DNA of 64,000 nucleotides from Macrostomum lignano. Its lineage: Eukaryota. Below are positions 13,551 to 62,324 of this stretch, piece after piece. The stretch lies in the NCBI GenBank assembly GCA_002269645.1, contig NIVC01000797.1:248001-312000 (forward strand), read 5' to 3'. The notes below the pieces were generated by a model, which was not told where the DNA came from, did no database searches, and saw nothing but the letters and a program-made list of their open reading frames with translations. The position numbers and the translations under genes were made by a program. Within the stretch, counting starts at the first letter, position 1, and every line of letters begins with the position of its first letter.

Positions 13551-15366
13551 AATTAATTTATTAATAATTAATCATAAATCATACTAAGCGCAAATGTTAA
13601 AATGTAGAACAGAAGCAACACTCGCTACACGAATCAAACCAGTTTATTCAATTAGTTACTGAAGTATTTGAGACCATTATTGAACACATTCAACACGGAC
13701 TGGCATATTAATAATAACTAATATATGTATACAATTTAATGTAATATACGCGTACTTGTTCTCTGCTAAGCATACAAGACTGACTGAAAGTACTAAATGC
13801 TAATCTTAGGCGTTGGTTTTGACCGCAACTGAGGCGTGTAAATCTTGCTGTGTTTCTTTTTAAAAACAAAGTCTGTCATTGGATTATAGAATAGCATAAA
13901 TTGCTTCGCGCATTCTGCATATATATTTTTTACAAATTCGGTATATATATTTATAGATCTATATTAGCGTAAATAGTGGATTTCAAAAGAAAGGAGTTTT
14001 TTACGCTGAGAGAGATGGTTTCGCACAACAAGTCAAAGTAAAGAATGGACTTTACTATATATCTAGCCAGGCATAAAATTAGCAAAGAACTAGGCTTGTT
14101 ATCTGTTGTCCGTGGCTAATATTATTCGTCAAATAATCTTTGAGCATCGTATAAAGCTTATTTGAACTACTTTTTTTAGTTGGCGTGCTTTTCAATTTGT
14201 CCATCCGTAAGCTTTTCTGTTATCAACTTTATTAACCCTATATAAACTCGACCTCTCTTTTTTTCGGCCACCCTTTTTCTACTGTCTCGAATCAGTCAAA
14301 TCTGCGTTTAGGCGAAAGAAAGCTTTGGTTGAGCTTTAATTATTTGGTTATTATTAGTTAAAAAATCTGCCGTTAGAGTCAATTCTATTCAGGTCAGAAA
14401 CTAAGTAGTAATGCTTGCTAGAATTCGTTAATATATTTCAGAAACCGTAGTTGGTTTGTTAGTATTTTATATATAACTGTATGTGTAAGCAAAGCACCAA
14501 GTTGCATTCAAGTTATTATTATTATTCACAATAGGAATTCGGTACGCCTCTGGCGAAACGGTGTTCTAAGATCTGTCGCTTTGTACTCAGTCTGCAGCGT
14601 CGTCAGTCTGTCCTTTTTGGCTTTTTGAGCTTGATCAATAAAAATAAGCTTTCTTATCCTATTCAACACACCCAAATATATATTTGGCCTTGCTGCGCTT
14701 GACTTCAATCAATTACTAATTTCTGCTTTGAAAGCATGTGCGTTGTTTTCTGTTGCATGAGCCTGCAGAAGATTGGAATGTTTCATTATAATGTGTAGTG
14801 TGCTCTGCTCAATGTACCTGAGTAACAAAACCAATCAAATATCAATTATTACGCATTTCAGTGTCTTAAAATAGCACGTTGGGCTTAATCCACATCAGCC
14901 GCAGCAAATAGGGCTCCGCGTTCTCTAAAATTCCTGAAACCCTATTTTCAACCGGAAAAGCAACAACAGCCAAGTATAGAAGTGGCTCAGGTGTTTCATT
15001 CCTTTTGCCCTGCCCATATTTGGAGAATCTTTCACTGATCTACGAGAGCGCATATTGCGTAAACAAGAAAAATCTCATCAAAAAGTAATAATTTCGTACA
15101 CTCTGCCCTACTTTCAGTAATAAGTGTGCTTTGTATCGATTTTCAGTCAGTACAATAGAAAACCGAATAGTTCAGCGGATTGAACACTGTTTGTTAAGGT
15201 TTTTACAAGGCCCTTATTTTATGAAGCTTCTTATAGCCACGATCAAACTAAATAAATGAACTAAATTACATGTGCACTATGCAACACGCTTTTGGAACTG
15301 CTAAATTAGTATTTAAAAATCCCCGGCCAATATATTAATAAATTGATCTGTCTCACGAAATGCCAG

Positions 15367-18076
<2,710 letters not shown>

Positions 18077-24200: not shown

Positions 24201-26105
24201 CCGTTTAGTGCGATGCCTGTATCATCGGATAAGGAGAAAAACTTATGGTAGTAGCAAGCATTTAGTGTTCGGCATAGTTAAACTTGATCTGAGGCTCCCG
24301 AAGTCCTGGCTTTCTGTGATTTGAGGCTCCTGAAGTGCTGGCTAGCTGTGATCTGAGGCTCCCGAAGTGCATTGTGTAAGTATAGCTTTATCAGTGATTT
24401 GAGGACTTAAAAGCACATGGTACAACTTATTTTGTATTAAGCGGCTCTTGAAGTGCCTGACTATCTATCTGAGATTTGTATCTCCCTATTACTTAATTAT
24501 GATATTAGCTATCATTCAGTGTTCGGCTCTCTCAGTTTTCAACAAGTTTTACAACCCCATGAGGCCCTGTGGCATAGTTTAACTTGACCTGAGGGTCTCA
24601 AAGAGCTGACTGACTGTGATCTGAGGCTCCCGATGTGCTGGCTTTCTGTGATTTGAGGCTCCGAATTGCTGACTAACTGTGATCTGAGGCTCTCGAAGTG
24701 CATTGTGTAAATAGTTTTATCAGTGATTCGAGGCCTTAGAATCACATGGTACAATTTAATTTGCAATATGGGGCTCCCGAAGTGCCTGACTATCTATTTG
24801 TGATTTGTATCTACCTATACCTAAACTTGACATAGCTCAACAAATGACCGTCTCACCTGCTACAATAAGTGTGGCGCCTCTCCAGGTGAAAGTGTCAATG
24901 AGGAATTCTGCCAGGTAGGCGAAGACAAAAGCTCCGACTCCCGAGCCGCACACCGCAATGCCGGTTGCCAAGGCGCGGCGCTTGTCAAAATACTGGCCTA
25001 CCATGACCAGAGCCGGCAGGTACATCATGCCGAAGCCAAATCCTGCAGCGAGTGTTTCGAAAGCAAGTCCGAGAGTTCATTTGAGGTCAGTGTGCAAATA
25101 TCAAATCTGAATACAAATCAAATCATAATCGTCATAATATTTCAATCATAATCCCCAATGACCCAGCTGAGTCTCACCGCCCAGAAAACCGTAGGTGAGG
25201 ATCAGCAGAGACACCGAGTTGGCCAACACAGCGCACACGCAGGCGCCGCAGGCGAGCAGGCCACCGAACATGGACACTTTGCGGCAGCCGAATCTGTCGC
25301 AGAGAAAACTCACGAATGGGCCTATCGAGGCGAATGTACGACAAAGATGTTGGTGTCTCGAGTATCCAGATGCAGTTCAGGGTATTCAAGCTGCTGTAAC
25401 AAACTATCCAGGTATCCAGGGTAATTATCCAGGTATCTCTCGTAATTATTTAGGTATCCCGGGTAATTATTCAGGTATCATGGGTAATTTTTCAGGTATC
25501 AGGGTACTTATTCAGGTATCGAGGGTAATTATTCAGGTATCCAGGGTTTAATTATTCATGCATCTATAGAGTAGCTATCCAGGTATCCAGGGTAATTATT
25601 CAGGAATCCAGTGTATTTATTCAGGTATCTAGAGTATTTATCCAGGTATCTAGGGTAATTATCAGGTATTTTGGATAATTATTCAGGTATTCAGGGTAAT
25701 CATTCAGGTATCCAGGGTTCTTATTCAGGTATCTAGGGAAATTAATCACGTGTCAAGGGTAATTATTCACGTGTCTAGGGTAACTATTCAGGTATCCAGG
25801 GTAATTTTTCAGGTATCCAAGGTACTATTCAGATGCCAATATACTATTCAGACACTACACAGGTACAGCTAATAAAGGTACATCCACTGACCAATAAACA
25901 TGTACATCCCATTGTACACGCTACCAATCCAAGCCGTCTTAGCCTTGGACTCTTGAAAGTACTCCAAGAACTCGTTGTAGAACAGGCCAAATGAAAAGCT
26001 GATGCCGTCAAGAATGACGCCAACCATGAAGGCTGAAAATGTCACCACCCAGCCGTAGCCGCCATCGAGTGGGATTCGAACCACGGCCTCACCTGTAGAC
26101 TGCAT
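19927..26105 (-). CDS. Monocarboxylate transporter family (SLC16/MCT, MFS) member, ~608 aa, 8 exons
   Basis: Exons (minus) 26105-25892, 25321-25178, 25042-24857, 24216-23841, 23062-22713, 22590-22321, 21874-21749, 20087-19927 (TGA); total 1827 nt, frame-consistent. Signatures: [58 protein letters not shown]; long central cytoplasmic loop. Start codon uncertain (an upstream exon is possible). Confidence 0.93.
20207..21555. repeat. 16-bp pyrimidine-rich satellite (TCCTCTCCCTACTCTC)n in the last MCT intron
   Basis: Read directly; it produces the spurious [11 protein letters not shown]. Confidence 0.95.
23108..23640. repeat. 67-bp tandem repeat, ~8 copies, in MCT intron 4
   Basis: Unit TGATTCATGAGGTTCTCTACGTTGCTTTGCACGAAACCTAAAACCCTCCAGAGTGCTCATCTGGAAG; copies near-identical. 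Confidence 0.95.
24271..24820. repeat. Two diverged ~230-250-bp direct copies, each built from ~31-bp subrepeats (CTGTGATCTGAGGCTCCCGAAG), in MCT intron 3
   Basis: GGCATAGTT(A/T)AACTTGA starts at ~24271 and ~24571; both copies end near GTGCCTGACTATCTAT. Confidence 0.8.
25395..25830. repeat. 21-bp degenerate minisatellite (CAGGGTAATTATTCAGGTATC)n in MCT intron 1
   Basis: Read directly; 7-aa GNYSGI periodicity in the ORF track. Confidence 0.9.
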
Positions 26106-26472
26106 CTTTTGACTTACTTCAGTGCAGGATGAAGGAAAACTATTTGAACAATTGTTAGTTCCAATTAATAATCTAAACTGACATGCAAACCACAGTCTGC
26201 ATTGTAAAATAATAAAACACCTTTATCTGGAGTGTCAGGTGTCAAATTTACCGAATTCTTATATTGCAATTGCCTTTATAGAAGCAACAGACTGAGGGGT
26301 GCAAAGGTTCCTGATAACAGTGAATGACTTGTGAGCAGCAAGTGTAGTGTTGAGTACCGCAACGTTGCTCTTATCGGAATTAAACAATCAGGCTGCTTTG
26401 ATCTTGCTTTACATTGTCCAAGTCAATTGTGACTCCGAGTTCACCGGAAAATGACATTTTTTCTGTATGTGG

Positions 26473-26945: not shown

Positions 26946-29592
26946 CAGTAGAACTACCAAGAGGGGGGGAAAAATTTCCCCCCCCCCCTGACAATTTTTT
27001 TTGCTGCGCCTGAACGGAGCAACGCAGGCACACGAAATTCAAGAACACGGGCTAACTTTTTGTTGCGCACCTTCTCAAACAAGAATCAAGTCGCCAACCC
27101 TCCGGACCGTCGAGATATTCGACGATTCTGCCAGAAGGTCGGATTTTTCCCATAAGCGCTAGTGTATTCAGTACACCCCTGTGCGCCAATTAGCACTGCG
27201 CCTCAGTGCAGCCTTGCCAAGTCTCCAAATTTCATCAGCACGTCGACCAAATGTGTCTGCATCAGCTCTGACTTCGTTGGTTACTGGCCTTTACCGAGAC
27301 GGAGCTTCTAGACCTTCAACAGGTGGCACCAGGTGACTATGAACACCTTGATGCGAATTTCTCGAGTTTCACCGATCAAGCCTCGACAGTAGGCAAGCCT
27401 CAACTGCCGGACACCCTCAGCTAGTCTCCTGAGCATTCCGTCATCATCCCGACACCGTCGGCTCCTTCAACAGGTGGCATCAGGTGACTATGGACGTCCT
27501 TTTGCAACTATGTCAGGTCTTTCTTATCAAGCTTCAATAATGGGCAAACCTCAACCGACGGACATTGTCAGCTAGTCTCTCAAGCATTCCGTCATCATCC
27601 CGACGCCGTCGGCTCCTTCAACAGATGACACCAAGTGACTATGGACACCCTGATGCGAATTTCTCTAGTTTCGCCGATCAAGCCTCGACAGTAGGCAAGC
27701 CTCAACTGCTGGACACCTTCAGCTAGTCTCCTAAGCATTCCGTCATCATCCCGACGCCGTCGGCTCCTTCAACAGATGACACCAGGGGAGTAAGGACACC
27801 CTGATGCGGATTTCTCTAGTTTCGCCGATCAAGCTTCGACAGTGGGCAAAAATCAACTGCTGGACATTCTCAGCTAGTCTCTCAAGCATTCCGTCATCAT
27901 CCCGACGCCGTCGGCTCCTTCAACAGATTACACCAGGTGACTATGGACAGCCTGTTGCAAATATGTCAGGTTTTTCTTATCAAGCTTCAATAATGAGCAA
28001 ATCTCAACTACTGGACATCCTCAGCTAGTCAGTCAAGCATTCAGCCATCACCCCGACGCCGTCGGCACCTTCAACAGGTGGCACCAGGGGAGTAAGGACA
28101 CCTGAGCGTGATTTTTCATCATGCTCTTAACATTTCTGAAGCTCTCAAAATTTTTAAAGCACGGACATTGCTATAGTTAAGCTTGAACTCATGTTGCTGT
28201 ATATTTATATTATTATTACACATACTTTTATGCATACGAGCTACATACATATTTTATTCGAAAAGCTGTTTAGTTTATTCAACTATAATATTGAACCGAA
28301 TTTTTATGCAGAAAGGGTTATGCTTATAAGAAGCCAGTAAATTCAATCCGTTTTTTCATTTTATAATGATTCAGAAATGTTAAGAGTATGATGAAAAATC
28401 ACGCTCAGGTGTCCTTACTCCCCTGGTGCCACCTGTTGAAGGTGCCGACGGCGTCGGGGTGATGGCTGAATGCTTGACTGACTAGCTGAGGATGTCCAGT
28501 AGTTGAGATTTGCTCATTATTGAAGCTTGATAAGAAAAACCTGACATATTTGCAACAGGCTGTCCATAGTCACCTGGTGTAATCTGTTGAAGGAGCCGAC
28601 GGCGTCGGGATGATGACGGAATGCTTGAGAGACTAGCTGAGAATGTCCAGCAGTTGATTTTTGCCCACTGTCGAAGCTTGATCGGCGAAACTAGAGAAAT
28701 CCGCATCAGGGTGTCCTTACTCCCCTGGTGTCATCTGTTGAAGGAGCCGACGGCGTCGGGATGATGACGGAATGCTTAGGAGACTAGCTGAAGGTGTCCA
28801 GCAGTTGAGGCTTGCCTACTGTCGAGGCTTGATCGGCGAAACTAGAGAAATTCGCATCAGGGTGTCCATAGTCACTTGGTGTCATCTGTTGAAGGAGCCG
28901 ACGGCGTCGGGATGATGACGGAATGCTTGAGAGACTAGCTGACAATGTCCGTCGGTTGAGGTTTGCCCATTATTGAAGCTTGATAAGAAAGACCTGACAT
29001 AGTTGCAAAAGGACGTCCATAGTCACCTGATGCCACCTGTTGAAGGAGCCGACGGTGTCGGGATGATGACGGAATGCTCAGGAGACTAGCTGAGGGTGTC
29101 CGGCAGTTGAGGCTTGCCTACTGTCGAGGCTTGATCGGTGAAACTCGAGAAATTCGCATCAAGGTGTTCATAGTCACCTGGTGCCACCTGTTGAAGGTCT
29201 AGAAGCTCCGTCTCGGTGAAGGCCAGTAACCAACGAAGTCAGAGCTGATGCAGACACATTTGGTCGACGTGCTGATGAAATTTGGAGACTTGGCAAGGCT
29301 GCACTGAGGCGCAGTGCTAATTGGCGCACAGGGGTGTACTGAATACACTAGCGCTTATGGGAAAAATCCGACCTTCTGGCAGAATCGTCGAATATCTCGA
29401 CGGTCCGGAGGGTTGGCGACTTGATTCTTGTTTGAGAAGGTGCGCAACAAAAAGTTAGCCCGTGTTCTTGAATTTCGTGTGCCTGCGTTGCTCCGTTCCG
29501 GCGCAGCAAAAAAAATTGTCAGGGGGGGGGGGAAATTTTTCCCCCCCTCTTGGTAGTTCGACGGGCGGAAAAATGGCTTGGTATTCCTACTG
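26946..29592. mobile_element. 2.65-kb foldback-type element: ~1.2-kb inverted arms (26946-28140 and 28370-29592) around a 229-bp AT-rich spacer; each arm holds ~5 tandem ~151-bp units
   Basis: Arms are reverse complements with only a few differences seen by eye; for example the two 74-aa ORFs at 27804-28028(+) and 28482-28706(-) are identical. Both ends sit in GTTAAC (TTAA or TA target duplication). The left arm lacks a 28-bp subterminal segment present in the right arm. No transposase ORF. Confidence 0.85.
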
Positions 29593-38325: not shown

Positions 38326-38675
38326 TATTCTCACTGTGCGCCTTAATACATATAAGCAAGACACCTCATGAGCTGAGAACTCTCCTGTCCCAACGGAGAA
38401 AAATATTCATACCGCATCAAATTTCTTTGTTAAATCCACCAGAGAAAGCTGTCACGGGACTGGCACACGGTTACCTGTCTTCTGAATGAGTATTTCAAAC
38501 CTAATGACATACAATAGCAGTCATAATCTCGCTGAGTTGTGTAAGCCCATTTCCATCAGCAGGTGCTGATTAAAGCAAGCAAATATTCTATTTGACAATA
38601 TCCACTCCATGCCAATATTCAAAGCATTTTGTACTGCATGGACTATCACTAAATCGTCCTTGACGCTTTCAGGTC

Positions 38676-48828
<10,153 letters not shown>

Positions 48829-49885: not shown

Positions 49886-51101
49886 GTAGCATATTGATAA
49901 GTAAAATGACACTATAAACATTGTATTAAATGACTGCTTGTATTACAGTTGCAAAAGCACAGACTAAATCTACTGAAGATGTGACGCTGCAATAAACTTT
50001 GTTTATTGTAAATTTTCTTTATTGCAATCCATTTTTTGTACTTCTCTAGGGAATCTTAAAGGAATATGATGGTTCCCATACCTATTACAATATCTATTAC
50101 TCATTTTGTTGTGTTCCACTGAATATCTACAAAGTGTCTCCTTGAGAACCTCCCAGCTGCAATTGTTCTTCATCTCAATTCAAGCCTGGAGATCTACGCT
50201 ATTAATCAACTATCTTGACCTGTTTCATACCATTTTTATGGATTTTTATATTTTTTCTACGGACATGTTGGAGCTTTGGACGCATGCAGACGAGGCTGAT
50301 AGAGTCGTTCTAGCTACAGCGAAAAGAGAGCTACCTTTCTCAATTCTCGAAGGAATTACTTTCCCTAAATCAGAGCAACTGGGACTCGCTCCGTGCCTCC
50401 GGCAACTTGGCTTGTTTGCAATGTAGCAGCAGAGCTACGAGCTACCCTCTTGTTAGGGAAATCTATAATCACGATCTGCTTTTGGCAAGAAGTTGGCGGC
50501 AACAGAAAATCCTCAACTGTTTGATCCCTCCGGAGGCGTTCTTGGGGCCTTGAGGGCTTACATCCTGCACCGCAGCAGTGTGTGGGGGGTGGGGGGCAAT
50601 ACAGCCAAGATTTATGGAGTAGCTTAACCTCGGAGAGTGGGAAACCAAATCCCACTTGCTTTCAAGGGGAAATTTGGGGAGGGGGGAGAAAGATAAAAAA
50701 GGCCGTTCTAGCGTCTGCCTTTTTATCGGCCTTTTAAGTTTTCTACGAACAGATATTGCTTATCTCCCAGTGTTGCATGCCTTGGCAAGTACCTACTTTA
50801 ACTATTATTTTATACCTTCAAATTACTAGCCTGTTACCAGCTGCTTTACTTCTTGCAATTCTTATCTCGTGTTAAAGAAACGAAACTCTGTATGCTTGAA
50901 TAATACATGTACTAGTCCATGCAAAACTATGACTATAATGCAATACAAATGTACAATACCCTATTCTAATAACCAGCTTATTTGAATACCAAAACAATTT
51001 TGCTTTGCGTTCGTCAGCTCATTTCAGACTTCGCTTCTTCATTGGAAGGGTAGAAAACGCTAAATCCTTCTGTGTAAATTGAATATCTCTTATCCATTTT
51101 C

Positions 51102-51430
51102 TTGTAGCTGATTGGCTGCAGCAAACCTCTCCCCTAACACTAGGGACGAGAAGTTCTGTAGGCACTGTACACCCAATTTATTGCCTTGTGCCCCTTGTAG
51201 CTGATTGGCTGCAGCAAATCTCTCCCTAACACTAGGGACGAGAAGTTCTGTAGCACTGTACACCCAATTTATTGCCTTGTGCCCCTTGTAGCTGATTGGC
51301 TGCAGCAAATCTCTCCCCTAACACTAGGGACGAGAAGTTCTGTAGCACAGTACGCCCTATTTATTGCCTTCTGCTACTTACTTGCAGTTGATTGGCTGGG
51401 GAAAACCTCTCCCCCACTTTAGTGACGAAA
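51102..51430. repeat. ~91-93-bp tandem repeat, 3 copies plus a degenerate 4th, each with GCTGATTGGC (inverse CCAAT)
   Basis: TTGTAGCTGATTGGCTGCAGCAAA starts at ~51102, ~51195 and ~51286. Confidence 0.85.
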
Positions 51431-51964
51431 AGTTTATGCACACTGTAAATTCTGCTTATTATGGTAGAAAAGTTGAATGCACGTTAAGGCCATCAAGGAG
51501 GGTTACATGTACAAAATATCATATTGCTTTAATTACATTTTATTGCTCTGGGTCATTATCATTTTAACTAACATTGCTGTGCTCAGAAATCGGCAATCAA
51601 CAATTCAAGTAATGCTTGTTAAGCAAACAGTAAGGACTGCGTAGTTGGTGCAGTCACTATGAGTTATTATCGCTATTTTCCTAAAAATGGGATCAAGTGC
51701 AAACAGTTGCAATTAAATAGCGCTGTGAATAATGATACTGCTTGCTCATAGTCAGCTCAATTTTGTTGGGTTAATTGTATTATATGTAAAGCGATCCATT
51801 TGAGCCATTTGAAATTTAACTGATTTGATCAGTTAATCAGGAAATTTGACACAATTATTAAAAATATTTTGAGTCGGTAGTGAGGGTTCATGAATTGTTC
51901 AGTTTTAACTGCTTAAAGGTCCAATTGACTTAAAAGATCCATTGAGTCATGGAACTAAGAGAAA

Positions 51965-52310
51965 CATTGACTCAGGAATCCATTGGGCTCACGGACATTC
52001 ACATTGACTCGGACTCATTCACTCAGGCCCAGGGACATATTCACTCAGGGACATATTCACTCAGGGACATATTCACTCAGGGACACATTCACTCAGGGAC
52101 ACATTCACTCAGGGACATATTCCCTCAGGGACACATTCACTCAGGGACATATTCACTCAGGGACATATTCCCTCAGGGACACATTCACTCAGGGACATAT
52201 TCACTCAGGGACATATTCCCTCAGGGACACATTCACTCAGGGACATATTCACTCAGGGACATATTCCCTCAGGGACACATTCACTCAGGGACATATTCAC
52301 TCAGGGACCC
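51965..52310. repeat. 16-bp minisatellite (CAGGGACATATTCACT)n directly 3' of the sirtuin-like stop codon
   Basis: Read directly. Confidence 0.93.
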
Positions 52311-52321
52311 ATTGGCTCAAT

Positions 52322-53446
52322 TCAGTCGATTCTCTTGGAGCGCCAACTCGTCTCTCCCGGCGCCACCGTGAGCGCCAGCCAGAACTCGCCGCGCCAGCCG
52401 TCAGCCGCCAGGCTGCACTCGAACGCTGGCGGCCTCCAGCCGTCGCCACGCCGCAGCGGCCGGAACAGCAGCCGCAAAGTCAGCGACATCACCGACGCCG
52501 GTCTGAGCGGCCGGAGCTGCACGCAGCTCGCGTTCAACGGCACGTCGAATTCGAACGGCGGTCGTCGCCGCCATTCTGCGTCGCTGCCGCCGCCGTAGCC
52601 AAGCCCGACTGCCGCCAGCATCGTGGAGATGAAGTCCTCGTCGGGGTCCTTCAGCAGCACAGACACCCGATCCGCGGTGGCACGAACGCACAGCCGACAG
52701 TGGACGATCCATCGAAGCGACTTTGGCGACTGCAGCGGAGCCAGCAGTCGGATCAGGAGCTTGGCTGGCGACGCGGACACTCGCTCGTCTGCCTCGTCGT
52801 CCAGCGGGGATCGCGAAAGTCCGCAGACCACGAGACGGCGCCAACATTGGCGGCGCTGACGGCGCTCAGATCGGCGCCAATCGGCAACTCGGTAGTCGCG
52901 TCGAACAGTTCCAAGCAGCAGCAGCAGGTCCGCCGACTCGATTGTCGACGCAATGACGTCATCGTTCTTGATGACGTCATCGCTACGAAGAGGCGCGGAG
53001 AGAGCTCCTCCGCAGGCGGGGCACAACCTGCCCGACGAATCGCCGTCGCTGTCAAAGTCCCAGTGAACTACGGTGCTTCGCCTGCGGCAGGCGTCACTGC
53101 CTCTCAGGCGACATCGTCGAAAGTCCCGACTGCCGGCGGCCTGCAGCAGTTTGGCCGGCGGAAAACCGGCGCGACGCAACCGGCCGTCCGAGGTGTCGAC
53201 GATCGTGGCACTGACGAGGCCGGCGGCGGCCAGAGCAGCCAGAGCGAGGTGCCCGACTCCAGGCTCGTCGACGCCGAGGTCCGACTGGTTGTCAATGCCG
53301 CTGCCAACGATGGCAAGGACGCGGCCGTCAGGTGCCGACTTGGCCATCCAGGTGCCGATATCAGCCGCCTGTCTGTCGGTTGTTGCTTCAGGAGCTTCTG
53401 ACAGCGGCTGCAGAAATTTGTGATTGCCTTGGCGACGTCGGGGCAT
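52322..53446 (-). CDS. Class IV (SIRT6/SIRT7-like) sirtuin homologue with degenerate catalytic motifs and a possibly YEATS-like C-terminal domain, 374 aa, single coding exon
   Basis: Open minus-strand frame; ATG at 53446 lies 2 nt after an acceptor (TTCTCAG, AG at 53450-53449). Collinear with SIRT6 (from memory): [10 protein letters not shown]~[27 protein letters not shown]~[40 protein letters not shown]~[33 protein letters not shown]~GRLC...RGEL; [9 protein letters not shown]~[29 protein letters not shown]~[20 protein letters not shown]. Confidence 0.8.
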   Translation of the reverse strand: [374 protein letters not shown]

Positions 53447-53474
53447 TTCTGAGAATAGTGTTGAGCAATATGAC

Positions 53475-53795
53475 AACTCAGAAACTCAGCAACTCAGTAA
53501 TTCAACAACTCAGCAGCTCAGTAACTCTGCAACTCAGAAACTCAGCAACTCAGCAACTCAGAAACTCAGCAACTCAGAAACTCAGCAACTCAGCAACTCA
53601 GCAACTCAGTAACTCAGTAACTCAGCAACTCATCAACTCTGCAACTCATCAACTCAGCAACTCAGTAACTCTGCAACTCAGAAACTCAGCAACTCAGCAA
53701 CTCAGCAACTCAGCAACTCAGTAACTCAGAAACTCAGAAACTCAGAAACTCAGCAACTCAGCAACTCAGTAACTCAGCAACTCAGAATCTCATCA
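53475..53795. repeat. 8-bp satellite (CTCAGCAA)n, in a probable 5'-UTR intron (53449-53855) of the sirtuin-like gene
   Basis: Read directly; a minus-strand GTAAG donor lies at 53855, and the candidate upstream exon has in-frame stops, so it would be non-coding. Confidence 0.9.
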
Positions 53796-54334
53796 ACATG
53801 GGGAAACGACAACTTAGCTAAAAGATAACAAATAGTATTTTCAGGAAGAACTTACCGAATTCGCAGTCAGATTCCAATGTTTATTCGAAGAACGAGTTTC
53901 AACGCTCTATGCGCTAAGAAGTCGCGCAGTTGATGCATAGCGAGACAAAGTCGCTAAGATGCTTTGCGCGGATGCGGCTTCTTCATATATGGTAAAAAAG
54001 CCGTCTCGTTTTACTGTTCTCAGCCGGCTTCATAAATAATTAATACCAAAAATAACTTGACAACCTAAGATGGGGGCAATTCTGCTGAGTGGAACCGTGA
54101 CAACAATGAATGAATTTTTCATAGCTTTTTGGCGAAATTAGTTTGCAAGTACGATGCGGTGTGTTAAGACATGTTTTATATTGTTCTTTAGTGCTTAGGT
54201 TGACCGGATCTGCTGAGCTTCGTCACTAATTTTTACATGATTCTCATAGGTGATTTTAGGATTTTTCGATCACTTTACGAGCGTATGATTCGAGAGAGAC
54301 GTCATTATTTTTCTCTGATTTCACTGCTCGTCAC

Positions 54335-56020
54335 TTGACTCGTCACTGATTCCATGACTCGTCACTGATTCCATTGATCGTCACTGATTCCATCACTCGT
54401 CACTGATTCCATTGATCATCACTGATTCCATCACTCGTCACTGATTCCATTGATCGTCACTGATTCCATCACTCGTCACTGATTCCATGACTCGTCACTG
54501 ATTCCATCACTCGTCACTGATTTCATTAATCGTCACTGATTCCATCACTCGTCACTGATTCCATCACTCGTCACTGATTCCATCACTCGTCACTGATTCC
54601 ATTGATCGTCACTGATTTCATTATTATCGTCACTGATTCCATTAATCGTCACTGATTCCATGACTCGTCACTGATTCCATGACTCGTCACTGATTCCATG
54701 ACTCGTCACTGATTTCATTAAAAATCGTCACTGATTCCATCACTTGTCACTGATTCCATGACTCGTCACTGATTCCATGACTCGTCACTGATTCCATGAC
54801 TCGTCACTGATTTCATTAAAAATCGTCACTGATTCCATCACTTGTCACTGATTCCATTGATCGTCACTGATTCCATTGATCATCACTGATTCCATTGATC
54901 GTCACTGATTCCATCACTTGTCACTGATTCCATTGATCGTCACTGATTCCATCACTCGTCACTGATTCCATTGATCATCACTGATTCCATCACTCGTCAC
55001 TGATTCCATGACTCGTCACTGATTCCATCACTCGTCACTGATTTCATTAATCGTCACTGATTCCATCACTCGTCACTGATTCCATCACTCGTCACTGATT
55101 CCATCACTCGTCACTGATTCCATTGATCGTCACTGATTCCATTGATCGTCACTGATTTCATTATTATCGTCACTGATTCCATTAATCGTCACTGATTCCA
55201 TGACTCGTCACTGATTCCATGACTCGTCACTGATTCCATGACTCGTCACTGATTCCATGACTCGTCACTGATTCCATGACTCGTCACTGATTTCATTAAA
55301 AATCGTCACTGATTCCATCACTCGTCACTGATTCCATTGATCGTCACTGATTCCATTGATCGTCACTGATTCCATCACTCGTCACTAATTCCATTGATCG
55401 TCACTGATTTCATTAATAATCGTCACTGATTCCATTGATCATCACTGATTCCATTGATCGTCACTGATTCCATTGATCGTCACTGATTCCATTGATCGTC
55501 ACTGATTCCATTGATCGTCACTGATTCCATTGATCGTCACTGATTTCATTAATAATCGTCACTGATTCCATTGATCATCACTGATTCCATTGATCGTCAC
55601 TGATTCCATTGATCGTCACTGATTCCATTGATCGTCACTGATTCCATTGATCATCACTGATTCCATTGATCGTCACTGATTCCATTGATCGTCACTGATT
55701 CCATTGATCGTCACTGATTCCATTGATCGTCACTGATTCCATTGATCGTCACTGATTCCATTGATCGTCACTGATTTCATTAATAATCGTCACTGATTCC
55801 ATTGATCATCACTGATTTCATTAATAATCGTCACTGATTCCATTGATCGTCACTGATTTCATTAATAATCGTCACTGATTCCATTGATCATCACTGATTC
55901 CATTGATCGTCACTGATTCCATTGATCATCACTGATTCCATTGATCTTCACTGATTCCATCACTTGTCACTGATTCCATTGATCGTCACTGATTCCATCA
56001 CTCGTCACTGATTCCATGAC
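54335..56020. repeat. 19-bp minisatellite (TCGTCACTGATTCCAT[TGA/GAC/CAC])n
   Basis: Read directly; constant core with a variable 3-nt tail, plus longer TTAATAAT variants. Confidence 0.96.
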
Positions 56021-56979
56021 TACCTGTACAATCGTATGTACAGTTCCCCCCAGTGACATCGGAACTGAAACAAGAGACGTATTTCTCATCCTTTTGAACG
56101 ATTTGAAAAAGCATATTTACTTCTGCCTTCAATGCGTCAAATTACTGGCTTGAGTATCTATCCGTTTCCCTCGTCAATTGTTGCAGGCAGCAAAGGCAGG
56201 TGACTGGAGAAAGAAATTCCCGTCACGGTCTCACGCTAAAAGTACGATATTTCTTCGCAGCTGAGGCATGCCAGTTCTCACACCTCTCTTTCTTCATCTA
56301 ATTCTGCTTATTCCTCCAGAGATGCTGAAGAGACAGAGGCTGCAATGCTAGCCTTAGTTAAAAAACTCATGCTCAATTGCCGCACCTCAATGGAAGGGAG
56401 CTGTCTGTGGAAGGCTTTCTTTTCTAAAGTGGCAGCGGGCTCGTCTTGTGCTTTCTTATCTTCCCTCTTTTCCCCTCTCCTCCGTGTGAGCTGGTTTCAT
56501 CAATAATGGGACTGACTGCTGCAAGGCGTGGATTTGGGAGCAGGCAAATATCGATTAAAAAAGATAGTTCCAAGAAGAACTCGTACAATATTTCTGATGA
56601 TTTTAGTTCTACCGCAATTTTCTATTGCTGCAAAATTCCCATGAAAATTCAAGAACAGACTGGCTTTTCAGCATTCTATTTTTATTGTAAGTCTCACAGA
56701 CACAAAATTTCTGAGGACAAACATCGAAGTTGATGCGGACTGTTTGATGTACTTGACATTTTGATACTTCGGAGTGGCAGTCAAAGCTGCTGGTTTATAT
56801 CGAGGCCGAACGTCGGTAATCCATCTTAGCGTCAGATATGTAGCGATTTATTCTGCGCCTTGGGGGCTGGCCCGATAAGCATTAGGCTAATATTCTCGCT
56901 TTTTTTAATCAAAACCGATTACCTTTCCATGCCGAAGCCTGAAAATATAATAAACTGTTCCTGCCGTCACAGTCAATAG

Positions 56980-57468
56980 GACTGGCCATAGACTATCGCT
57001 GCCATTTCAACACACTGCTGTGGGGTCTGGCCATAGACTATCGCTGCCATTTCAACACACTGCTGTGGGGTCTGGCCATAGACTATCGCTGCCATTTCAA
57101 CACACTGCTGTGGGGTCTGGCCATAGACTATCGCTGCCATTTCAACACACTGCTGTGGGGTCTGGCCATAGACTATCGCTGCCATTTCAACACACTGCTG
57201 TGGGGTCTGGCCATAGACTATCGCTGCCATTTTAACACACTGCTGTGGGATCTGGCCATAGACTATGGATTCAATTTCAACACACTGCTGTGGGATCTGG
57301 CCATAGACTATCGCTGCCATTTCGACACACTGCTGTGAGGGCTGGCCATAGACTATCGCTGCCATTTCAACACACTGCTGTGGGGTCCGGCCAAAGACTA
57401 TCATTGCCATTTCAACACACTGCTGTGGGGTCCAGCCATAGACTATCACTGCCATTTGACACTGCTGT
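56980..57468. repeat. 45-bp tandem repeat, ~10 copies (CTGGCCATAGACTATCGCTGCCATTTCAACACACTGCTGTGGGGT)
   Basis: Read directly; 15-aa periodicity in the ORF track. Confidence 0.95.
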
Positions 57469-58454
57469 GCAAAGAGAAAGGAGCACTTATTCCATACGAA
57501 GGCTTAGCTCTAGAATTGAATCCAAGAGGTTTCCAGTCCACACCTTCTCTTGAAGCTCATGGCCCGGGGGTCGGGTGGGGTAGAAAGAGAAGATTAAATT
57601 GAGTATAGAGAGCGAGATAGAAGACTATCTGAGATACTATACAGATATGGGCAGGTGAAGGGTGCATGAGTTTTCAGGTGATTTTGTTGATGAAGAAGAA
57701 TCTCCAGGTCCCAGAGCGCCCGTCAGAAAAGTGACGCACAGTGGTACGAGCTGAGGAAGATCGGGCTGACTGAGTGTGTTTGCCCACTAGGTGGTGCCGG
57801 CTCATTTCGAGTGGGTGTCAAATTTCCTTTAAGACTGCGCCGCAGCGCTTCCTGTTTTTTGTTATTGCTGTGCAAATAATAATCAAGGAAAATTATTGAT
57901 TATTAACAGTAATATTTTTCTGACAGAAATCTGATTAGTACAAGTTGAGGGTATCGACGGGGGCCACATTGACAGGTAGGGTTTTGAGTTCGCAATTGGA
58001 TAGGTAGTTCAAATAAAAGTACACTGCATTTATCATCTAGACCTGTTAAAAAGATCTCGAAGTACTATTAAAAAACTATAGCTACAAAGAAAACGAGACA
58101 ACAGAATGACAACAGATTGTGGAATTATTTGCTAAGTTATAATCAACACTTATACTACTATTGCGTAGGACGTGCATTTTCAATCGCAAGACAAAAACAA
58201 AAGAGTAACTCCAAGAGTAACTTCTATGGTAAAGTCACCAGTTCGTGACAGAAAAATACACGGGGAGGAGGGAATTTTACATCATAGGAGTTTATTATCG
58301 GGTCTTCGAAAAGACAATTTTGCTTTGTGCATTACAACGTAACTCTTAGATAAGACAGCGCTATCTTTGACAGTCGTGTCATTTTATTACAGTATGATCA
58401 ATTTCAGGCTTTGTTTTCTAAATATAAACAAAATACACAACGAAACAAGGTCAC

Positions 58455-59706
58455 ATGGTAAATGGTCACATAGTGACACAAGTCTCAAAGCACAGTGCTA
58501 AATGGCCACATAGTGACACAAGTCTCAAAGCACAGTGCTAAATGGTCACATAGTGATACAAGTTTCAAAGCACAGTGCTAAATGGTCACATAGTGATACA
58601 AGTTTCAAAGCACAGTGCTAAATGGCCACATAGTGATACAAGTTTCAAAGCACAGTGCTAAATGGTCACATAGTGATACAAGTTTCAAAGCACAGTGCTA
58701 AATGGTCACATAGTGATACAAGTTTCAAAGCACAGTGCTAAATGGCCACATAGTGATACAAGTTTCAAAGCACAGTGCTAAATGGCCACATAGTGATACA
58801 AGTTTCAAAGCACAGTGCTAAATGGTCACATAGTGATACAAGTCTCAAAGCACAGTGCTAAATGGCCACATAGTGATACAAGTTTCAAAGCACAGTGCTA
58901 AATGGCCACATAGTGATACAAGTTTCAAAGCACAGTGCTAAATGGCCACATAGTGATACAAGTCTCAAAGCACAGTGCTAAATGGCCACATAGTGATACA
59001 AGTCTCAAAGTACGGTGCTCATTGGTCACATAGTGACACAAGTCTCAAAGCACAGTGCTAAATGGTCACATAGTGACACAAGTCTCAAAGCACAGTGCTT
59101 AATGGTCACACAGTGACACAAGTCTCAAAGCACAGTGCTAAATGGCCACATAGTGATACAAGTCTCAAAGTACGGTGCTCATTGGTCACATAGTGACACA
59201 AGTCTCAAAGCACAGTGCTAAATGGTCACATAGTGATACAAGTCTCAAAGTACGGTGCTCATTGGTCACATAGTGATACAAGTTTCAAAGCACAGTGCTA
59301 AATGGCCACATAGTGATACAAGTTTCAAAGCACAGTGCTAAATGGTCACATAGTGATACAAGTCTCAAAGCACAGTGCTAAATGGCCACATAGTGATAAA
59401 AGTTTCAAAGCACAGTGCTAAATGGCCACATAGTGATACAAGTTTCAAAGCACAGTGCTAAATGGCCACATAGTGATACAAGTCTCAAAGCACAGTGCTA
59501 AATGGCCACATAGTGATACAAGTCTCAAAGTACGGTGCTCATTGGTCACATAGTGACACAAGTCTCAAAGCACAGTGCTAAATGGTCACATAGTGACACA
59601 AGTCTCAAAGCACAGTGCTTAATGGTCACACAGTGACACAAGTCTCAAAGCACAGTGCTAAATGGCCACATAGTGATACAAGTCTCAAAGTACGGTGCTC
59701 ATTGGT
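58455..59706. repeat. 40-bp minisatellite (AAATGGTCACATAGTGATACAAGTTTCAAAGCACAGTGCT)n, ~31 copies, starting ~60 bp 3' of the GPCR stop codon
   Basis: Read directly. Confidence 0.96.
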
Positions 59707-59766
59707 CAGAGCGTCAATTACAGTTCTGGTTGAAACCACACAGTGTCCGATTTCGTCAGTGCCAAA

Positions 59767-61098
59767 TCAGTCGTACAAGGAGTCGTGCGACTTGGCCAGC
59801 TTCTGTCCGTGCCCTTCAATGTGCTGCAACGATCCACAACCCGTGGCCGCGTCTCCGCTGCCGCCGGCGCTGGTCCCGTCGCCACCATTGTTGGCGTACA
59901 GGCATTTCAGGTGCACGGTCTCCAAGGCGTGCGAATCTGCGCCGGAGGTCATATCGGCTGTAGCGTCGGCATTGGCGGCCGCGGCTTCGGCCGCCCGACG
60001 GCAAACTCCGCAGACCAGCGGACGGGCCGCCAGACGGTAGACGTCGCTGCGAAATTTGGCGGAGCTGGCCGAGTATACGAAGAAATTTAACAGAGAATCG
60101 GTGACGGACAACACGTTGGTGATGGTGTCCGGGTGGATCGGCAGCGTGCCCTGCAAGCTTGGAGACACAATCAGCATCGTAGTGGACACGAAGGTTGGAA
60201 ACTCGAGCACGGAGAACAGGATGGCCAGGCCGAGGACCATCTGGCTGGCTCTGCGCGAGCTCAGCGTCCGTTTCTGCTGACTGCGCCCGGCATTCTGACG
60301 GCAAGAGTGGCCGCACCGTTTCGCTGGCCGGCTGCGTCGAATCTTCACCCACATGATCACGGTGGGGATCGGGATGAGCACTGTTGGAATCAGCGACTGG
60401 AAAGCGTACAGAGCCCACTGGGCGCCTGACGAGTTCATGAGAGGCCGGATGACGACCAGGTCTGGCAGGTTGGTGCATAGCGCTCCCATGTGGCCGAGGT
60501 TGTTCAGGACGGCCAGCAGGAGGGCGACGGCGATCACGGCGCAGAACATCCCGGCCAGGCGAGTCCGGCTGAACAGCAAGAAACGACGCGAAGCCAACGG
60601 CCGGGCGATGACTTCGCAACGGGCTGAACTAATCAACAGTACGTTCCAGTTCCTGATGGACACCAGAGTGTTGATGCCGATGTGTACGCAGGTTGTCACC
60701 GTGTAGCTAGGCACAGTGTGCCAGTGCTCAAAGTCGCTACGAACAATGCCAGTCTCCACTAGCAGGATGCACTGCAGGCAGATCTCGGTGCACGAGATTG
60801 ACAGCAGGGAGAAGCGGACAGCTCGATTGTCGAATTTCTGCTTGGCGAAGATGAACAGCGAGAGCGAATTGGCAACCAGAGCCACGGCGGCGATGGGCAG
60901 AATGATGAGGCTGTTGAATTTTTCTGTCTCCACAAAGCCGTGTCCGTGATCTTTGAGGGTTTTATTGGGCTCGGATTCGTTGCACCAGTCTCTGATGTAG
61001 TATAGCATGGCTGCTGGAGCTGGGAAGCAAGTTGGGTAAGGGTTCAATTCGTTAGGCAATTTGGCTTTAATGCACTTGTCGATTTCAAGAAAAGTCAT
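59767..61098 (-). CDS. Intronless class A (rhodopsin-like) orphan GPCR of FMRFamide/peptide-receptor-like type, 443 aa
   Basis: Seven hydrophobic segments; TM1 VAN, TM2 SISCTE, TM3 LISSARCEVIARPL (DRY region), TM5 LIP, basic ICL3, TM6 FSVLEFP, TM7 DSLLNFFVY followed by helix 8 SAKFR. Confidence 0.92.
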   Translation of the reverse strand: MTFLEIDKCIKAKLPNELNPYPTCFPAPAAMLYYIRDWCNESEPNKTLKDHGHGFVETEKFNSLIILPIAAVALVANSLSLFIFAKQKFDNRAVRFSLLSISCTEICLQCILLVETGIVRSDFEHWHTVPSYTVTTCVHIGINTLVSIRNWNVLLISSARCEVIARPLASRRFLLFSRTRLAGMFCAVIAVALLLAVLNNLGHMGALCTNLPDLVVIRPLMNSSGAQWALYAFQSLIPTVLIPIPTVIMWVKIRRSRPAKRCGHSCRQNAGRSQQKRTLSSRRASQMVLGLAILFSVLEFPTFVSTTMLIVSPSLQGTLPIHPDTITNVLSVTDSLLNFFVYSASSAKFRSDVYRLAARPLVCGVCRRAAEAAAANADATADMTSGADSHALETVHLKCLYANNGGDGTSAGGSGDAATGCGSLQHIEGHGQKLAKSHDSLYD

Positions 61099-62324
61099 AA
61101 TGGTTTGGCATATTTAATGTGGTTCTGTCCCTGCCTAACCGGAAGACATCAGTTAGTATTAGGCGGCTTGTTTGTCACTGGCTCAGTTCTGCGACCTAAT
61201 TTTGTTTTCCCATGCGCCCATGCGGTAAATGCTTCCTGAACCTAATCGTAATTGGAAAATTCCACATATTGTCTCACAAAATCCGCCTTTGTCTGGCAGC
61301 CAGGGGATTCAGCCTCAGATCGAATCAAGGGAGGGAGGTTTGATAAAAAACGTTCTTTGGAAAAAGTATTTCTGCCTTGTGAATTGTAGGTTTCTGTTGA
61401 CACAAAAGCGTAACGATGATTTCTGGCTAAGAGGGCTCACGAGATAATAGCCTTCTATTATAGGGGCCGGTTCTGTAACGACCCTCGATTATATTTAGCA
61501 TTGGGCTTTTGCACATCGGGAAACGTATTTGCTAATTCATTCCACTTAAATATTGCGGAAATAGAAAAATTAGAGTTTTTCTGCAATAGTTCTCCAGTTT
61601 TGACATTTCCGATACGTATTTCCTTAGCTCAGAAGATTACCTAGGTTCCTATGAATCATGAAAATAATAAGCAGCCTCAATTGAAGCACGAATACCGGTA
61701 TCACGTGATTAACTTAATAAAATTAACCCTCAACTCGATATCTCTAATAGTAGCTCGAGTCTCATTTAGTTATAAATCCATCTGTCTTTGCTCATTTCTG
61801 CCGGAGCCAACGCCGCATGATCCACCCGCGGATGCTGCTGCCTCCCTCATCTGTGAGTTTGCGCTGGGTCGTGTGGCTTCCTTGTTGACTGACTGGCTCT
61901 CTCTCTCTCTCTCTCTCTCTCTGTGGCAGCAGGACGCATCTTTCCGCGCGAATCTCCTTCCAGCCTCGCTCCCCAACCTGGGCATCCCTCCTTTGCCACC
62001 GGAAGCCTGAACTTATCAAAGGCCGAGCTGTCAGCGGGCCGCTAACTGCCGCATCGGCTCCAGCAAACAAACCGCAGGCAGAGAAGCTGAGCTGGCTTGG
62101 ACTCTGCTTGTCTTTGTTCCCAGAGCTCGTTAAAAGTTGATCAAGTCCCGACTGGAACGGACTGTGAATCATGCAGGCTTATCTGCTATTTTTCCAAGAC
62201 GCTTTGGCAGACATTGGAGTCCATCCAAAATACTCGTATGTCGAAGAAGATTCAACTGCAAAATGCACAGAATAAATTCAAGAGACGACGTATCAGTCAA
62301 ATTTTTATCTAAGACACAAAATCA

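What the first reader, a model, noticed from the sequence alone, without database searches (positions are those of the whole stretch)
52322..53446. Catalytically dead SIRT6/7-like pseudo-sirtuin with a putative YEATS-like C-terminal domain
Seen: an intact 374-aa ORF collinear with class IV sirtuins over the whole Rossmann/Zn fold, with the chemistry-critical motifs altered. GAGIS becomes GSGID. The FRG cofactor-binding loop (SIRT6 R65) is essentially deleted: about 8 residues separate GSGID from EP, against roughly 30 in SIRT6. QNVDG becomes DTSDG, the catalytic His of ELHG (SIRT6 H133) becomes QAAG, GTS becomes GTV and NLQ becomes GLS. Candidate Zn ligands remain (RC-x7-C and CPAC). The last ~130 aa (about 52322-52717: [12 protein letters not shown]...RRPPFEF...SLTLRLLF) alternate like beta strands and carry PPFE, reminiscent of YEATS domains and of the C-terminal extension I recall in some fungal and invertebrate class IV sirtuins. 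Known: H133 and R65 are needed for SIRT6 deacylase activity, and YEATS domains read acyl-lysine. Inference: a retained, non-catalytic sirtuin acting as a chromatin scaffold, acyl-lysine reader or dominant-negative partner. The intronless CDS could be a retrocopy that took on a new function.
Basis: partly seen in the sequence, partly recalled or inferred. Interest (0 to 1): 0.78.

Follow-up and report, generated by a model that had tools for sequence, protein, structure and literature searches.

The report
Catalytically dead SIRT6/7-type sirtuin gene
An intact single-exon gene in an animal genome encodes a very diverged relative of the SIRT6/SIRT7 deacylases that keeps the fold and a little-known extra C-terminal beta domain but has lost almost every residue needed to bind NAD+ or its substrate, so it is either a rare sirtuin pseudoenzyme or a gene on its way out.

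Summary
Window 52322-53446 (minus strand) is an open 374-codon frame. It is homologous to class IV (SIRT6/7-type) sirtuins: best hit E 5.5e-11 among 1.84 billion proteins, the ten best hits scanned all carry PF02146, and the MSA-based model matches human SIRT6 at Foldseek E 2e-13. All the listed motif losses are real, and the acyl-lysine-peptide 'FGE' loop is gone too. The YEATS idea is not supported. The last ~130 residues are the degenerate copy of an all-beta C-terminal domain shared by 'long' class IV sirtuins of amoebozoans, a fungus, a metamonad and a euglenid. That domain has no Pfam model and no significant match to a solved structure, and shows no YEATS signal. Evidence that the frame has been kept open: P about 4e-4 by shuffling, all visible length differences in frame, 59 of 75 hydrophobic-core columns retained, and codon periodicity, GC3 and CpG content like the neighbouring GPCR gene. 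Evidence for relaxed constraint: sirtuin-domain identity to any relative is at most 30%, against about 60% between active members from different supergroups, and composition is strongly Arg/Ala/Gly/Pro-rich. No orthologue was found, so dN/dS and expression remain untested. Best reading: a non-catalytic, binding-only sirtuin paralogue (0.55). Main rival: a recently dead gene (0.3).

The parts
52322..53446 (-). Complete single-exon ORF, 374 codons plus TGA: degenerate 'long' class IV sirtuin
53327..53446 (-). N-terminal helix region (residues 1-40). '...[11 protein letters not shown]' lines up with '...GLATWMSRA' of P0001 by eye; MAFFT gaps this stretch. The start Met aligns with the Met of the relatives
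   Evidence: pLDDT 90-97 for residues 11-40
52715..53326 (-). Degenerate sirtuin (Rossmann plus Zn module) domain, residues 41-244
53291..53305 (-). GSGID, the remnant of the GAGIS dinucleotide-binding motif. Only 8 residues follow (53267-53290) where relatives have about 33, including FRG and W
53183..53200 (-). VDTSDG in place of SQN.DG. Q and N are lost; D87 and G88 are kept
53135..53137 (-). Ala104 codon in the column of the catalytic His (SIRT6 chain position 133). All 58 relatives have His
53012..53113 (-). Zn-module remnant: C112, R115 in place of the second Cys, an extra C120, then C142-P-A-C145. The loop 123-135 has low model confidence
52958..52993 (-). [12 protein letters not shown]. 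The substrate-peptide 'F-G-E-x-L' loop is replaced by a short near-duplication ([10 protein letters not shown])
52904..52915 (-). LGTV in place of LGSS (Ser -> Val181)
52799..52825 (-). CGLSRSPLD in place of CNLQxTPLD (N209G, Q211S, T213S)
52325..52714 (-). C-terminal all-beta domain (residues 245-374), homologous to the C-terminal extension of long class IV sirtuins. It keeps the PF motif (296-300) and W368
53474..53797 (.). 8-bp tandem array (CAACTCAG, about 40 copies) ending 28 bp upstream of the ATG
52030..52308 (.). 16/48-bp tandem array starting 14 bp downstream of the stop codon

Best explanation
Shown. The ORF descends from the 'long' class IV (SIRT6/SIRT7-type) sirtuins, which carry an extra all-beta domain of about 120 aa after the catalytic domain. 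It keeps the whole architecture in one uninterrupted exon:
- the N-terminal helix;
- the Rossmann core strands;
- three of the four canonical zinc cysteines;
- the C-terminal helix;
- the C-terminal beta domain.

It has lost the cofactor-binding loop, the Q/N of QN.DG, the catalytic His, the Ser of GSS, the N/Q of NLQ and the F-G-E substrate loop.

It cannot bind NAD+ productively, so it cannot deacylate or ADP-ribosylate.

Inferred. Because the frame and the fold-defining positions have been kept while the active site was erased, the product most likely works, if expressed, as a non-catalytic binding protein (a pseudoenzyme). It would use the retained C-terminal beta domain and the surface of the dead sirtuin fold to bind whatever the active class IV enzyme binds through those parts, whether a partner protein or chromatin. 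In that way it would act as a competitor or a scaffold. It would not be an acyl-lysine reader.
For: Homology:
- E 5.5e-11 in an exhaustive search; the ten best hits scanned are all SIR2.
- The nearest relative, P0001, matches human SIRT6 at 2e-61 and SIRT7 at 7e-59.
- The MSA-based AF2 model has pLDDT 81.5 and pTM 0.81, and its best PDB matches are SIRT6 (E 2e-13).

C-terminal domain:
- It is collinear with the family's extension.
- hhalign E 5.6e-4; hmmsearch E 1.3e-3, exceeded by 1 of 1000 shuffles.

Loss of function residues:
- 46 of 81 conserved columns are changed, including every NAD/catalysis/substrate motif listed.

Maintenance of the frame:
- Only 0.04% of position-preserving shuffles stay open, and 3.1% of possible single-base changes would create a stop. 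Yet the protein is about 74% diverged from every relative.
- Every length difference visible in the alignments leaves the downstream frame intact: the loop deletion of about 25 aa, the Zn-module changes, the FGE-loop shortening, and the insertions near residues 195 and 335. Homology runs to W368, six residues before the stop.

Fold retention:
- 59 of 75 hydrophobic-core columns remain hydrophobic, against a 42% background.
- C-terminal domain identity to relatives (17%) equals the identity among active relatives.

Gene-like DNA:
- GC1/2/3 is 0.69/0.56/0.74, with GC3 equal to that of the neighbouring GPCR.
- CpG o/e is 1.24, against 0.5-0.65 in the flanks.
Against: - No orthologue or paralogue was found anywhere, so there is no dN/dS. 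There are no expression data.
- The sirtuin domain has diverged about twice as far as normal for the family: at most 30% identity, against about 60% between members from different eukaryotic supergroups.
- Composition is extreme: Arg 13%, GARP 38%, FYMINK 10%. This fits relaxed constraint under a GC-driving process.
- In 66% GC DNA the mirror antisense frame is also open, so openness alone is weaker evidence than in AT-rich DNA.
- The confident model rests on the relatives in the alignment. The sequence alone gives pLDDT 34.
- Pfam's own SIR2 model does not detect the ORF.
Confidence: 0.55

Rival explanations
1. A dying gene. This would be a unitary or processed pseudogene of a class IV sirtuin that lost function fairly recently. 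Its frame would still be open only because GC-rich DNA is poor in stop codons.
For: - Accelerated divergence of the catalytic domain and GC-driven amino-acid composition.
- The antisense mirror frame is open too.
- Nothing with the same losses exists among the 58 relatives found in the 1.84 billion cluster representatives (standing for about 15 billion proteins).
- It sits in a minisatellite-rich region, with arrays abutting both ends.
- It has no introns.
Against: - About 74% amino-acid divergence without a single stop or frameshift is very unlikely under neutrality. The stop probability is 0.019 per codon, and P(open) is 4e-4 to 8e-4.
- All visible length differences preserve the frame.
- Hydrophobic core positions are preferentially kept.
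- CpG o/e of 1.24 and 66% GC, within flanks of about 40% GC and CpG o/e 0.5-0.65, show no decay towards the background.
Confidence: 0.3
2. One reading: a pseudo-sirtuin whose C-terminal part is a YEATS-like acyl-lysine reader.
For: The C-terminal 130 aa are predicted to be all-beta with nine strands. Only at the level of 'beta-sandwich-like' does this resemble a YEATS domain.
Against: - No PF03366 hit for the ORF or for 20 homologous domains at E<=10.
- No YEATS chain in PDB for the domain profile at E<=10.
- The domain is the ordinary extension of active class IV sirtuins.
- The sirtuin substrate loop is lost.
Confidence: 0.03
3. Still an enzyme, using NAD+ or another cofactor with non-canonical residues.
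For: - The G-x-G of the Rossmann motif, D87-G88 and three or four cysteines remain.
- Non-canonical sirtuins are still being discovered, for example FAM118 (PMC12700824, abstract seen).
Against: Several independent NAD-contacting elements are missing at once: the cofactor loop is deleted, and N85, H104, S181 and N209 sit in columns that are 98-100% conserved in 58 relatives.
Confidence: 0.03
4. A chance ORF in a GC-rich island with spurious similarity, or the real gene is the 472-codon ORF on the plus strand.
For: - The plus-strand ORF 51983-53401 is longer.
- Pfam finds nothing for the minus-strand ORF.
Against: - E 5.5e-11 against 1.84 billion proteins, with collinear matches to sirtuins only.
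- The plus-strand ORF starts inside a tandem array, lies in the mirror frame that stays open whenever the sense codons avoid TTA/CTA/TCA (1 such codon among those tabulated), and has no meaningful family match.
Confidence: 0.01

Closest known systems
Human SIRT6 (and SIRT7), class IV sirtuins
   Same: - Best sequence match in PDB and best structural match of the model.
- Same order of N-terminal helix, Rossmann core, Zn module and C-terminal helix.
- Shared P..TH.AL helix, D-G, G105, three Zn cysteines and L-G of LGTS.
   Different: - No cofactor loop, catalytic His, N114/Q113, S216, N240/Q242 equivalents or substrate FGE/DWE loop.
- It scores 19 bits against SIRT6, where an amoebozoan class IV enzyme scores 211 bits.
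- It carries a folded beta domain where the solved SIRT6 chains have no counterpart.
'Long' class IV sirtuins with the extra C-terminal beta domain. Examples: Balamuthia mandrillaris KAL6073944.1 (P0001), Xylaria longipes KAI8951282.1 'sirtuin-7' (P0010), Paratrimastix pyriformis KAJ4461701.1 (P0013), Pyxidicula and Ploeotia transcripts
   Same: - Same two-domain architecture and length (about 370-400 aa).
- The C-terminal domain is collinear, with the R-R-L start strand region, the PF motif, the L.L.F strand and the terminal W.
   Different: - All of these keep every catalytic motif.
- The window ORF shares at most 30% identity with them in the sirtuin domain, while they share about 60% with each other.
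- Its GHY.EP motif is replaced by [12 protein letters not shown].
Dead paralogues that regulate or replace an active enzyme, for example the trypanosome AdoMetDC prozyme (PMC5201418); general concept in PMC5106787
   Same: A paralogue that retains the fold and has an erased active site.
   Different: No partner, expression or activity data exist here. No sirtuin pseudoenzyme under the names searched was found in the paper library.
YEATS domain (PF03366)
   Same: Possibly the same broad fold class (beta sandwich), judged from predicted secondary structure only.
   Different: No sequence or profile similarity. The origin is different, since this is the native extension of class IV sirtuins.

Membership tests
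Sirtuin / SIR2 superfamily, class IV | Significant sequence similarity to SIR2-domain proteins, closest to SIRT6/7 | tested here: met
   58 hits at E<=1e-3, best 5.5e-11; the ten best are all PF02146. SIRT6 is top in PDB. The nearest relative is itself SIRT6/7-like.
Sirtuin / SIR2 superfamily, class IV | Passes Pfam PF02146 gathering threshold | tested here: not met
   hmmscan returns no family even at E<=10.
Sirtuin / SIR2 superfamily, class IV | Rossmann fold plus Zn-ribbon module | tested here: met
   The MSA-based AF2 model (pLDDT 81.5) matches SIRT6 at E 2e-13, TM 0.60-0.64 on the target. Caveat: confidence comes from the relatives; the single-sequence model fails.
Sirtuin / SIR2 superfamily, class IV | GAGxS motif and FRG cofactor-binding loop | tested here: not met
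   GSGID; the loop is deleted, with 8 residues against about 33.
Sirtuin / SIR2 superfamily, class IV | QN.DG motif and catalytic His (HG) | tested here: not met
   D84-T85-S-D87-G88. A104 sits in a column with His in 58 of 58 relatives.
Sirtuin / SIR2 superfamily, class IV | Four Zn-binding cysteines (2 x CxxC) | tested here: inconclusive
   C112, C142 and C145 are kept, and the second Cys is R115. A Cys five residues further on (C120) might substitute.
Sirtuin / SIR2 superfamily, class IV | NAD+-dependent deacylase or ADP-ribosyltransferase activity | not testable with these tools
   Needs recombinant protein.
Long class IV sirtuins (C-terminal beta domain, unnamed) | All-beta domain of about 110-130 aa directly after the sirtuin domain, with the family's motifs | tested here: met
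   Collinear alignment with W368 invariant. hhalign E 5.6e-4; hmmsearch E 1.3e-3, 1 of 1000 shuffles higher. Nine predicted strands at pLDDT mostly 87-95.
YEATS (PF03366) | Profile match to the YEATS family | tested here: not met
   No PF03366 hit for the ORF or for 20 homologous domains at E<=10. No YEATS chain in PDB.
YEATS (PF03366) | Ig-like eight-strand sandwich with an aromatic acyl-lysine cage | not testable with these tools
Pseudogene | Disabling mutations (stops, frameshifts, lost start) | tested here: not met
   ATG to TGA is uninterrupted, and homology is in frame from M1 to W368.
Pseudogene | Neutral evolution (dN/dS about 1) or no expression | not testable with these tools
   No orthologue was found. 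No transcript data.
Processed retrocopy | Intronless copy with a poly(A) remnant, target-site duplications and an intron-bearing parent | tested here: inconclusive
   Intronless: yes. No A-run after the stop. Tandem arrays on both flanks hide any duplications. The parent gene is not available.

The most novel reading that the evidence does not exclude
This is a true sirtuin pseudoenzyme, a class not found under the names searched in the paper library. It would be a non-catalytic class IV sirtuin kept by selection in an animal lineage for the binding function of its dead Rossmann/Zn scaffold and, above all, of the conserved but uncharacterised C-terminal beta domain of long class IV sirtuins. 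Because catalysis is absent, it would be a natural separation-of-function allele showing what that domain binds.
Probability: 0.35. Interest if true: 0.6.

Novelty: new variant of a known kind. Interest (0 to 1): 0.4.

Why it matters
Dead paralogues are known for many enzyme families. My searches of the paper library found no sirtuin pseudoenzyme under the names tried, and the phrase 'lacks the catalytic histidine' together with 'sirtuin' returned one unrelated review. If this gene is expressed and under selection, it would show that the class IV sirtuin scaffold has a function independent of NAD+ chemistry. It would also point to the C-terminal beta domain. That domain is shared by class IV sirtuins of several eukaryotic supergroups, has no Pfam model and has no significant match among solved structures, so it is the part worth characterising. 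If the gene is simply decaying, it is an ordinary lineage-specific gene loss caught before the first stop codon.

Tried and rejected
- Word-indexed protein search with the ORF and with the C-terminal-domain alignment A3: both returned nothing. The second did not even recover the members of the alignment, so that negative says little.
- Scan of metagenome contigs: no relative.
- Exact look-ups of the ORF (374-aa and 384-aa versions) and of the neighbouring GPCR (two start choices): not on record. The source organism stays unidentified.
- A 14-3-3 exon search to identify the organism returned only short fragments with at most 73% identity. Uninformative.
- Rfam: nothing in the window.
- Single-sequence AF2: useless (pLDDT 34).
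- Fold search against viral models: only viral Sir2 proteins and insignificant beta-domain hits.
This is a lead only.
- The plus-strand 472-aa ORF was rejected as a mirror-frame artefact that begins in a tandem array.
- A possible 38-nt GTAAGT...TAG intron upstream of the ATG (about 53818-53855) was judged too speculative to report as a part.

Full report
**What is at the coordinates.** On the minus strand, an ATG at 53446 opens a 374-codon frame that ends with TGA at 52322-52324. The frame sits in a 1.1-kb island of 63-69% GC, inside flanks of about 40% GC. Tandem arrays lie very close on both sides: an 8-bp array ends 28 bp upstream of the ATG, and a 16/48-bp array starts 14 bp after the stop. 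A longer ORF on the plus strand (51983-53401, 472 aa) overlaps it. That ORF begins inside the downstream tandem array and has no meaningful family match. It also lies in the mirror frame, the one antisense frame that tends to stay open opposite a GC-rich coding frame; the other four frames carry 5-11 stops each.

**Is it a sirtuin?** Pfam's SIR2 model does not detect the ORF, even at E<=10. The word-indexed protein search found nothing either.
- phmmer against PDB lists human SIRT6 first (E 0.005), collinear over residues 61-237, followed by SIRT3 and Thermotoga Sir2.
- The exhaustive HMMER search of 1.84 billion cluster representatives gives 58 proteins at E<=1e-3, best 5.5e-11. The ten best all carry PF02146.
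- Where a source name exists, the relatives are class IV sirtuins. They come from Balamuthia, Pyxidicula and Vexillifera (Amoebozoa), Xylaria (fungus, 'sirtuin-7'), Paratrimastix (Metamonada), Ploeotia (euglenid), Ditylenchus (nematode), Emiliania and a bacterial MAG.
- The best relative, P0001, matches human SIRT6 at 2e-61 and SIRT7 at 7e-59. Other sirtuin classes score 5e-33 or weaker.
- With the 58 relatives as alignment, AlphaFold2 gives pLDDT 81.5 and pTM 0.81. Foldseek then ranks 35 SIRT6 chains first (E 2e-13 to 3e-11).

Homology to class IV sirtuins is therefore secure.

**The motif losses.** In alignment A2, 81 columns are at least 75% conserved among the relatives, and the window ORF matches 35 of them. 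What is lost is exactly the chemistry:

| Element in relatives | Window ORF |
|---|---|
| T-G-A-G-I-S-T | V-G-S-G-I-D-N |
| I-P-D-F-R-G-P-x-G-x-W loop | deleted (8 residues between GSGID and E61-P62, about 33 in SIRT6) |
| S-Q-N-x-D-G | V-D-T-S-D-G |
| E-x-H-G-N | Q-A-A-G-S (Ala104 where 58 of 58 relatives have His) |
| second Zn cysteine | Arg115 (another Cys lies five residues on) |
| F-G-E-x-L substrate-peptide loop | a short near-duplication, [10 protein letters not shown] |
| G-S-S | G-T-V |
| N-L-Q-x-T | G-L-S-R-S |

Retained are G48, G50, P62, H66, L72, D87, G88, G94, G105, C112, C142, C145, D173, G179, L205, L210, P214, D216 and L238. From what is known of sirtuin structures (my own knowledge), these look like fold-defining rather than chemical positions.

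**The C-terminal 130 residues.** These are not an orphan extension. Most of the relatives continue after the sirtuin domain with a domain of about 110-130 aa. Its consensus is xF.L.RR...(V.G.D.DG.P.TLF..V)...EPF...L.F.GHY.EP.L...P...L.YDP....W.
- The window ORF is collinear with this domain: [59 protein letters not shown]. W368 falls in the invariant Trp column.
- Taken on its own, the window segment matches a profile of 20 such domains at hhalign E 5.6e-4. hmmsearch gives E 1.3e-3, a score exceeded by 1 of 1000 shuffles.
- The model shows nine strands here, mostly at pLDDT 87-95.
- The domain has no Pfam family. No solved structure covers it: the PDB matches of P0001 stop at residue 266. The only profile hit in PDB is a weak one to the Ig-like ferrous-iron domain of desulfoferrodoxin (E 0.011).
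- Nothing points to YEATS.

A bioRxiv report on rice SRT1 states that its long C-terminus is needed for ligand binding (10.1101/2021.11.05.467508).

**Alive or dead?** No orthologue exists in any collection I could reach, so dN/dS cannot be computed. Expression is unknown. Indirect evidence points both ways.

*For maintenance:*
- With the ORF's own position-specific composition, the stop probability is 0.019 per codon. P(open) is 8e-4 analytically and 4e-4 by shuffling. About 3.1% of all single-base changes would create a stop.
- The protein differs from every relative at about 74% of sites, which cannot have accumulated neutrally without stops.
- Each length difference visible in the alignments leaves the downstream frame intact as far as W368.
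- 59 of 75 hydrophobic-core columns stay hydrophobic, against a 42% background.
- The C-terminal domain is no more diverged from the relatives (17% identity) than they are from each other (17.5%).
- The DNA looks like a gene of this genome. Codon periodicity is clear (GC 0.69/0.56/0.74). GC3 equals that of the intronless GPCR 6 kb away (0.74). CpG o/e is 1.24, against 0.5-0.65 in the flanks.

*For relaxation:*
- The sirtuin domain shares at most 30% identity with any relative, while active members from different supergroups share about 60%.
- It scores 19 bits against SIRT6, where an amoebozoan enzyme scores 211 bits.
- Composition is pushed far towards GC-rich codons: Arg 13.1%, Lys 2.1%, GARP 38% against 29% in the relatives.
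- The sequence alone does not fold in AF2.

I read this as a paralogue that lost catalysis long ago and has since evolved fast, but with the frame and the fold under some constraint (0.55). A recently dead gene is the main rival (0.3).

**How it would work.** The following steps are inference.
- Without the cofactor loop, N85, H104, S181 and N209, it should not bind or activate NAD+.
- Without the FGE loop, it should not clamp an acyl-lysine peptide.
- What remains is the dead scaffold plus the C-terminal beta domain.
- The usual logic of pseudoenzymes is that such a protein binds the partners of its active paralogue and competes, scaffolds or regulates (PMC5106787; the prozyme example in PMC5201418).

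Which partner that would be cannot be said from sequence.

**Context.** The window is from an animal genome. It also holds:
- a Cys-loop channel exon (weak Pfam match, below the gathering score);
- two 14-3-3 genes;
- MFS-type exons that look like a monocarboxylate transporter by eye (Pfam matches MFS_1 for one exon only);
- a P2X receptor gene;
- a rhodopsin-type GPCR.

In all, 44% of the window is tandem repeats. A published survey reports that animals ancestrally had four class IV families (SIR6-9) with frequent lineage-specific loss (PMC9486876). Which of these the ORF derives from cannot be decided at this divergence.

**Verdict.** It is a dead class IV sirtuin with the family's native C-terminal beta domain. 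It is not a YEATS fusion, and function and selection remain unproven. I rate it a new variant of a known kind, of moderate interest.

Noticed in passing
window 26948-29562: Perfect (100%) inverted repeat with 1193-nt arms and a 229-nt spacer. Each arm contains about 5 copies of a 151-bp tandem unit. It is either a foldback-type element or palindrome, or an assembly artefact.
   Followed up: partly
whole window: 44% of the 64 kb lies in tandem arrays with periods of 4-263 bp, more than 30 distinct arrays, many inside introns and abutting genes. This is an unusually minisatellite-rich region.
   Followed up: partly
window 11640-13190 and 15310-16650 (+): Two neighbouring 14-3-3 genes, each split into at least two exons (Pfam E 3e-34 to 5e-42). 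The best identity to any database fragment was only about 70%.
   Followed up: partly
window 38664-46960 (+): P2X ATP-gated channel gene. Exons lie at 38664-38915, 44144-44368 and 46640-46960, with large tandem arrays in the introns.
   Followed up: partly
window 59767-61098 (-): Intronless 443-aa rhodopsin-type GPCR (7tm_1 E 1.2e-5, Srw E 1.3e-5). It is GC-rich like the sirtuin-like ORF (GC3 0.74), and a 40-bp tandem array ends 59 bp after its stop.
   Followed up: partly
window 24840-26222 (-) and 5409-5675 (+): MFS exons that look like a monocarboxylate transporter by eye (MFS_1 E 1e-9 for one exon; another exon has no Pfam hit), and a Cys-loop ligand-gated channel transmembrane exon (E 1.6e-4, below the Pfam gathering score).
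   Followed up: partly
relatives P0001, P0004, P0010, P0013 etc. (alignment A3): The all-beta C-terminal domain of about 120 aa in 'long' class IV sirtuins occurs in several eukaryotic supergroups. It has no Pfam model and no solved structure. Its profile weakly matches the Ig-like iron domain of desulfoferrodoxin (E 0.011). Some members add a zf-UBP finger after it.
   Followed up: partly
window 50000-61100: CpG observed/expected is 1.0-1.24 in the two intronless genes and 0.9 in 14-3-3 exons, but 0.5-0.65 in intergenic DNA (0.61 for the whole window). Genes therefore look like CpG islands in a CpG-depleted background.
   Followed up: no
window 52958-52993 (-): In-frame near-duplication GATGACGTCAT...GATGACGTCAT ([10 protein letters not shown]), exactly where the sirtuin substrate-binding FGE loop should be.
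   Followed up: no
window 51983-53401 (+): 472-codon antisense ORF that starts inside the 16-bp tandem array. It is the mirror-frame by-product of the GC-rich sense frame, not a gene.
   Followed up: yes
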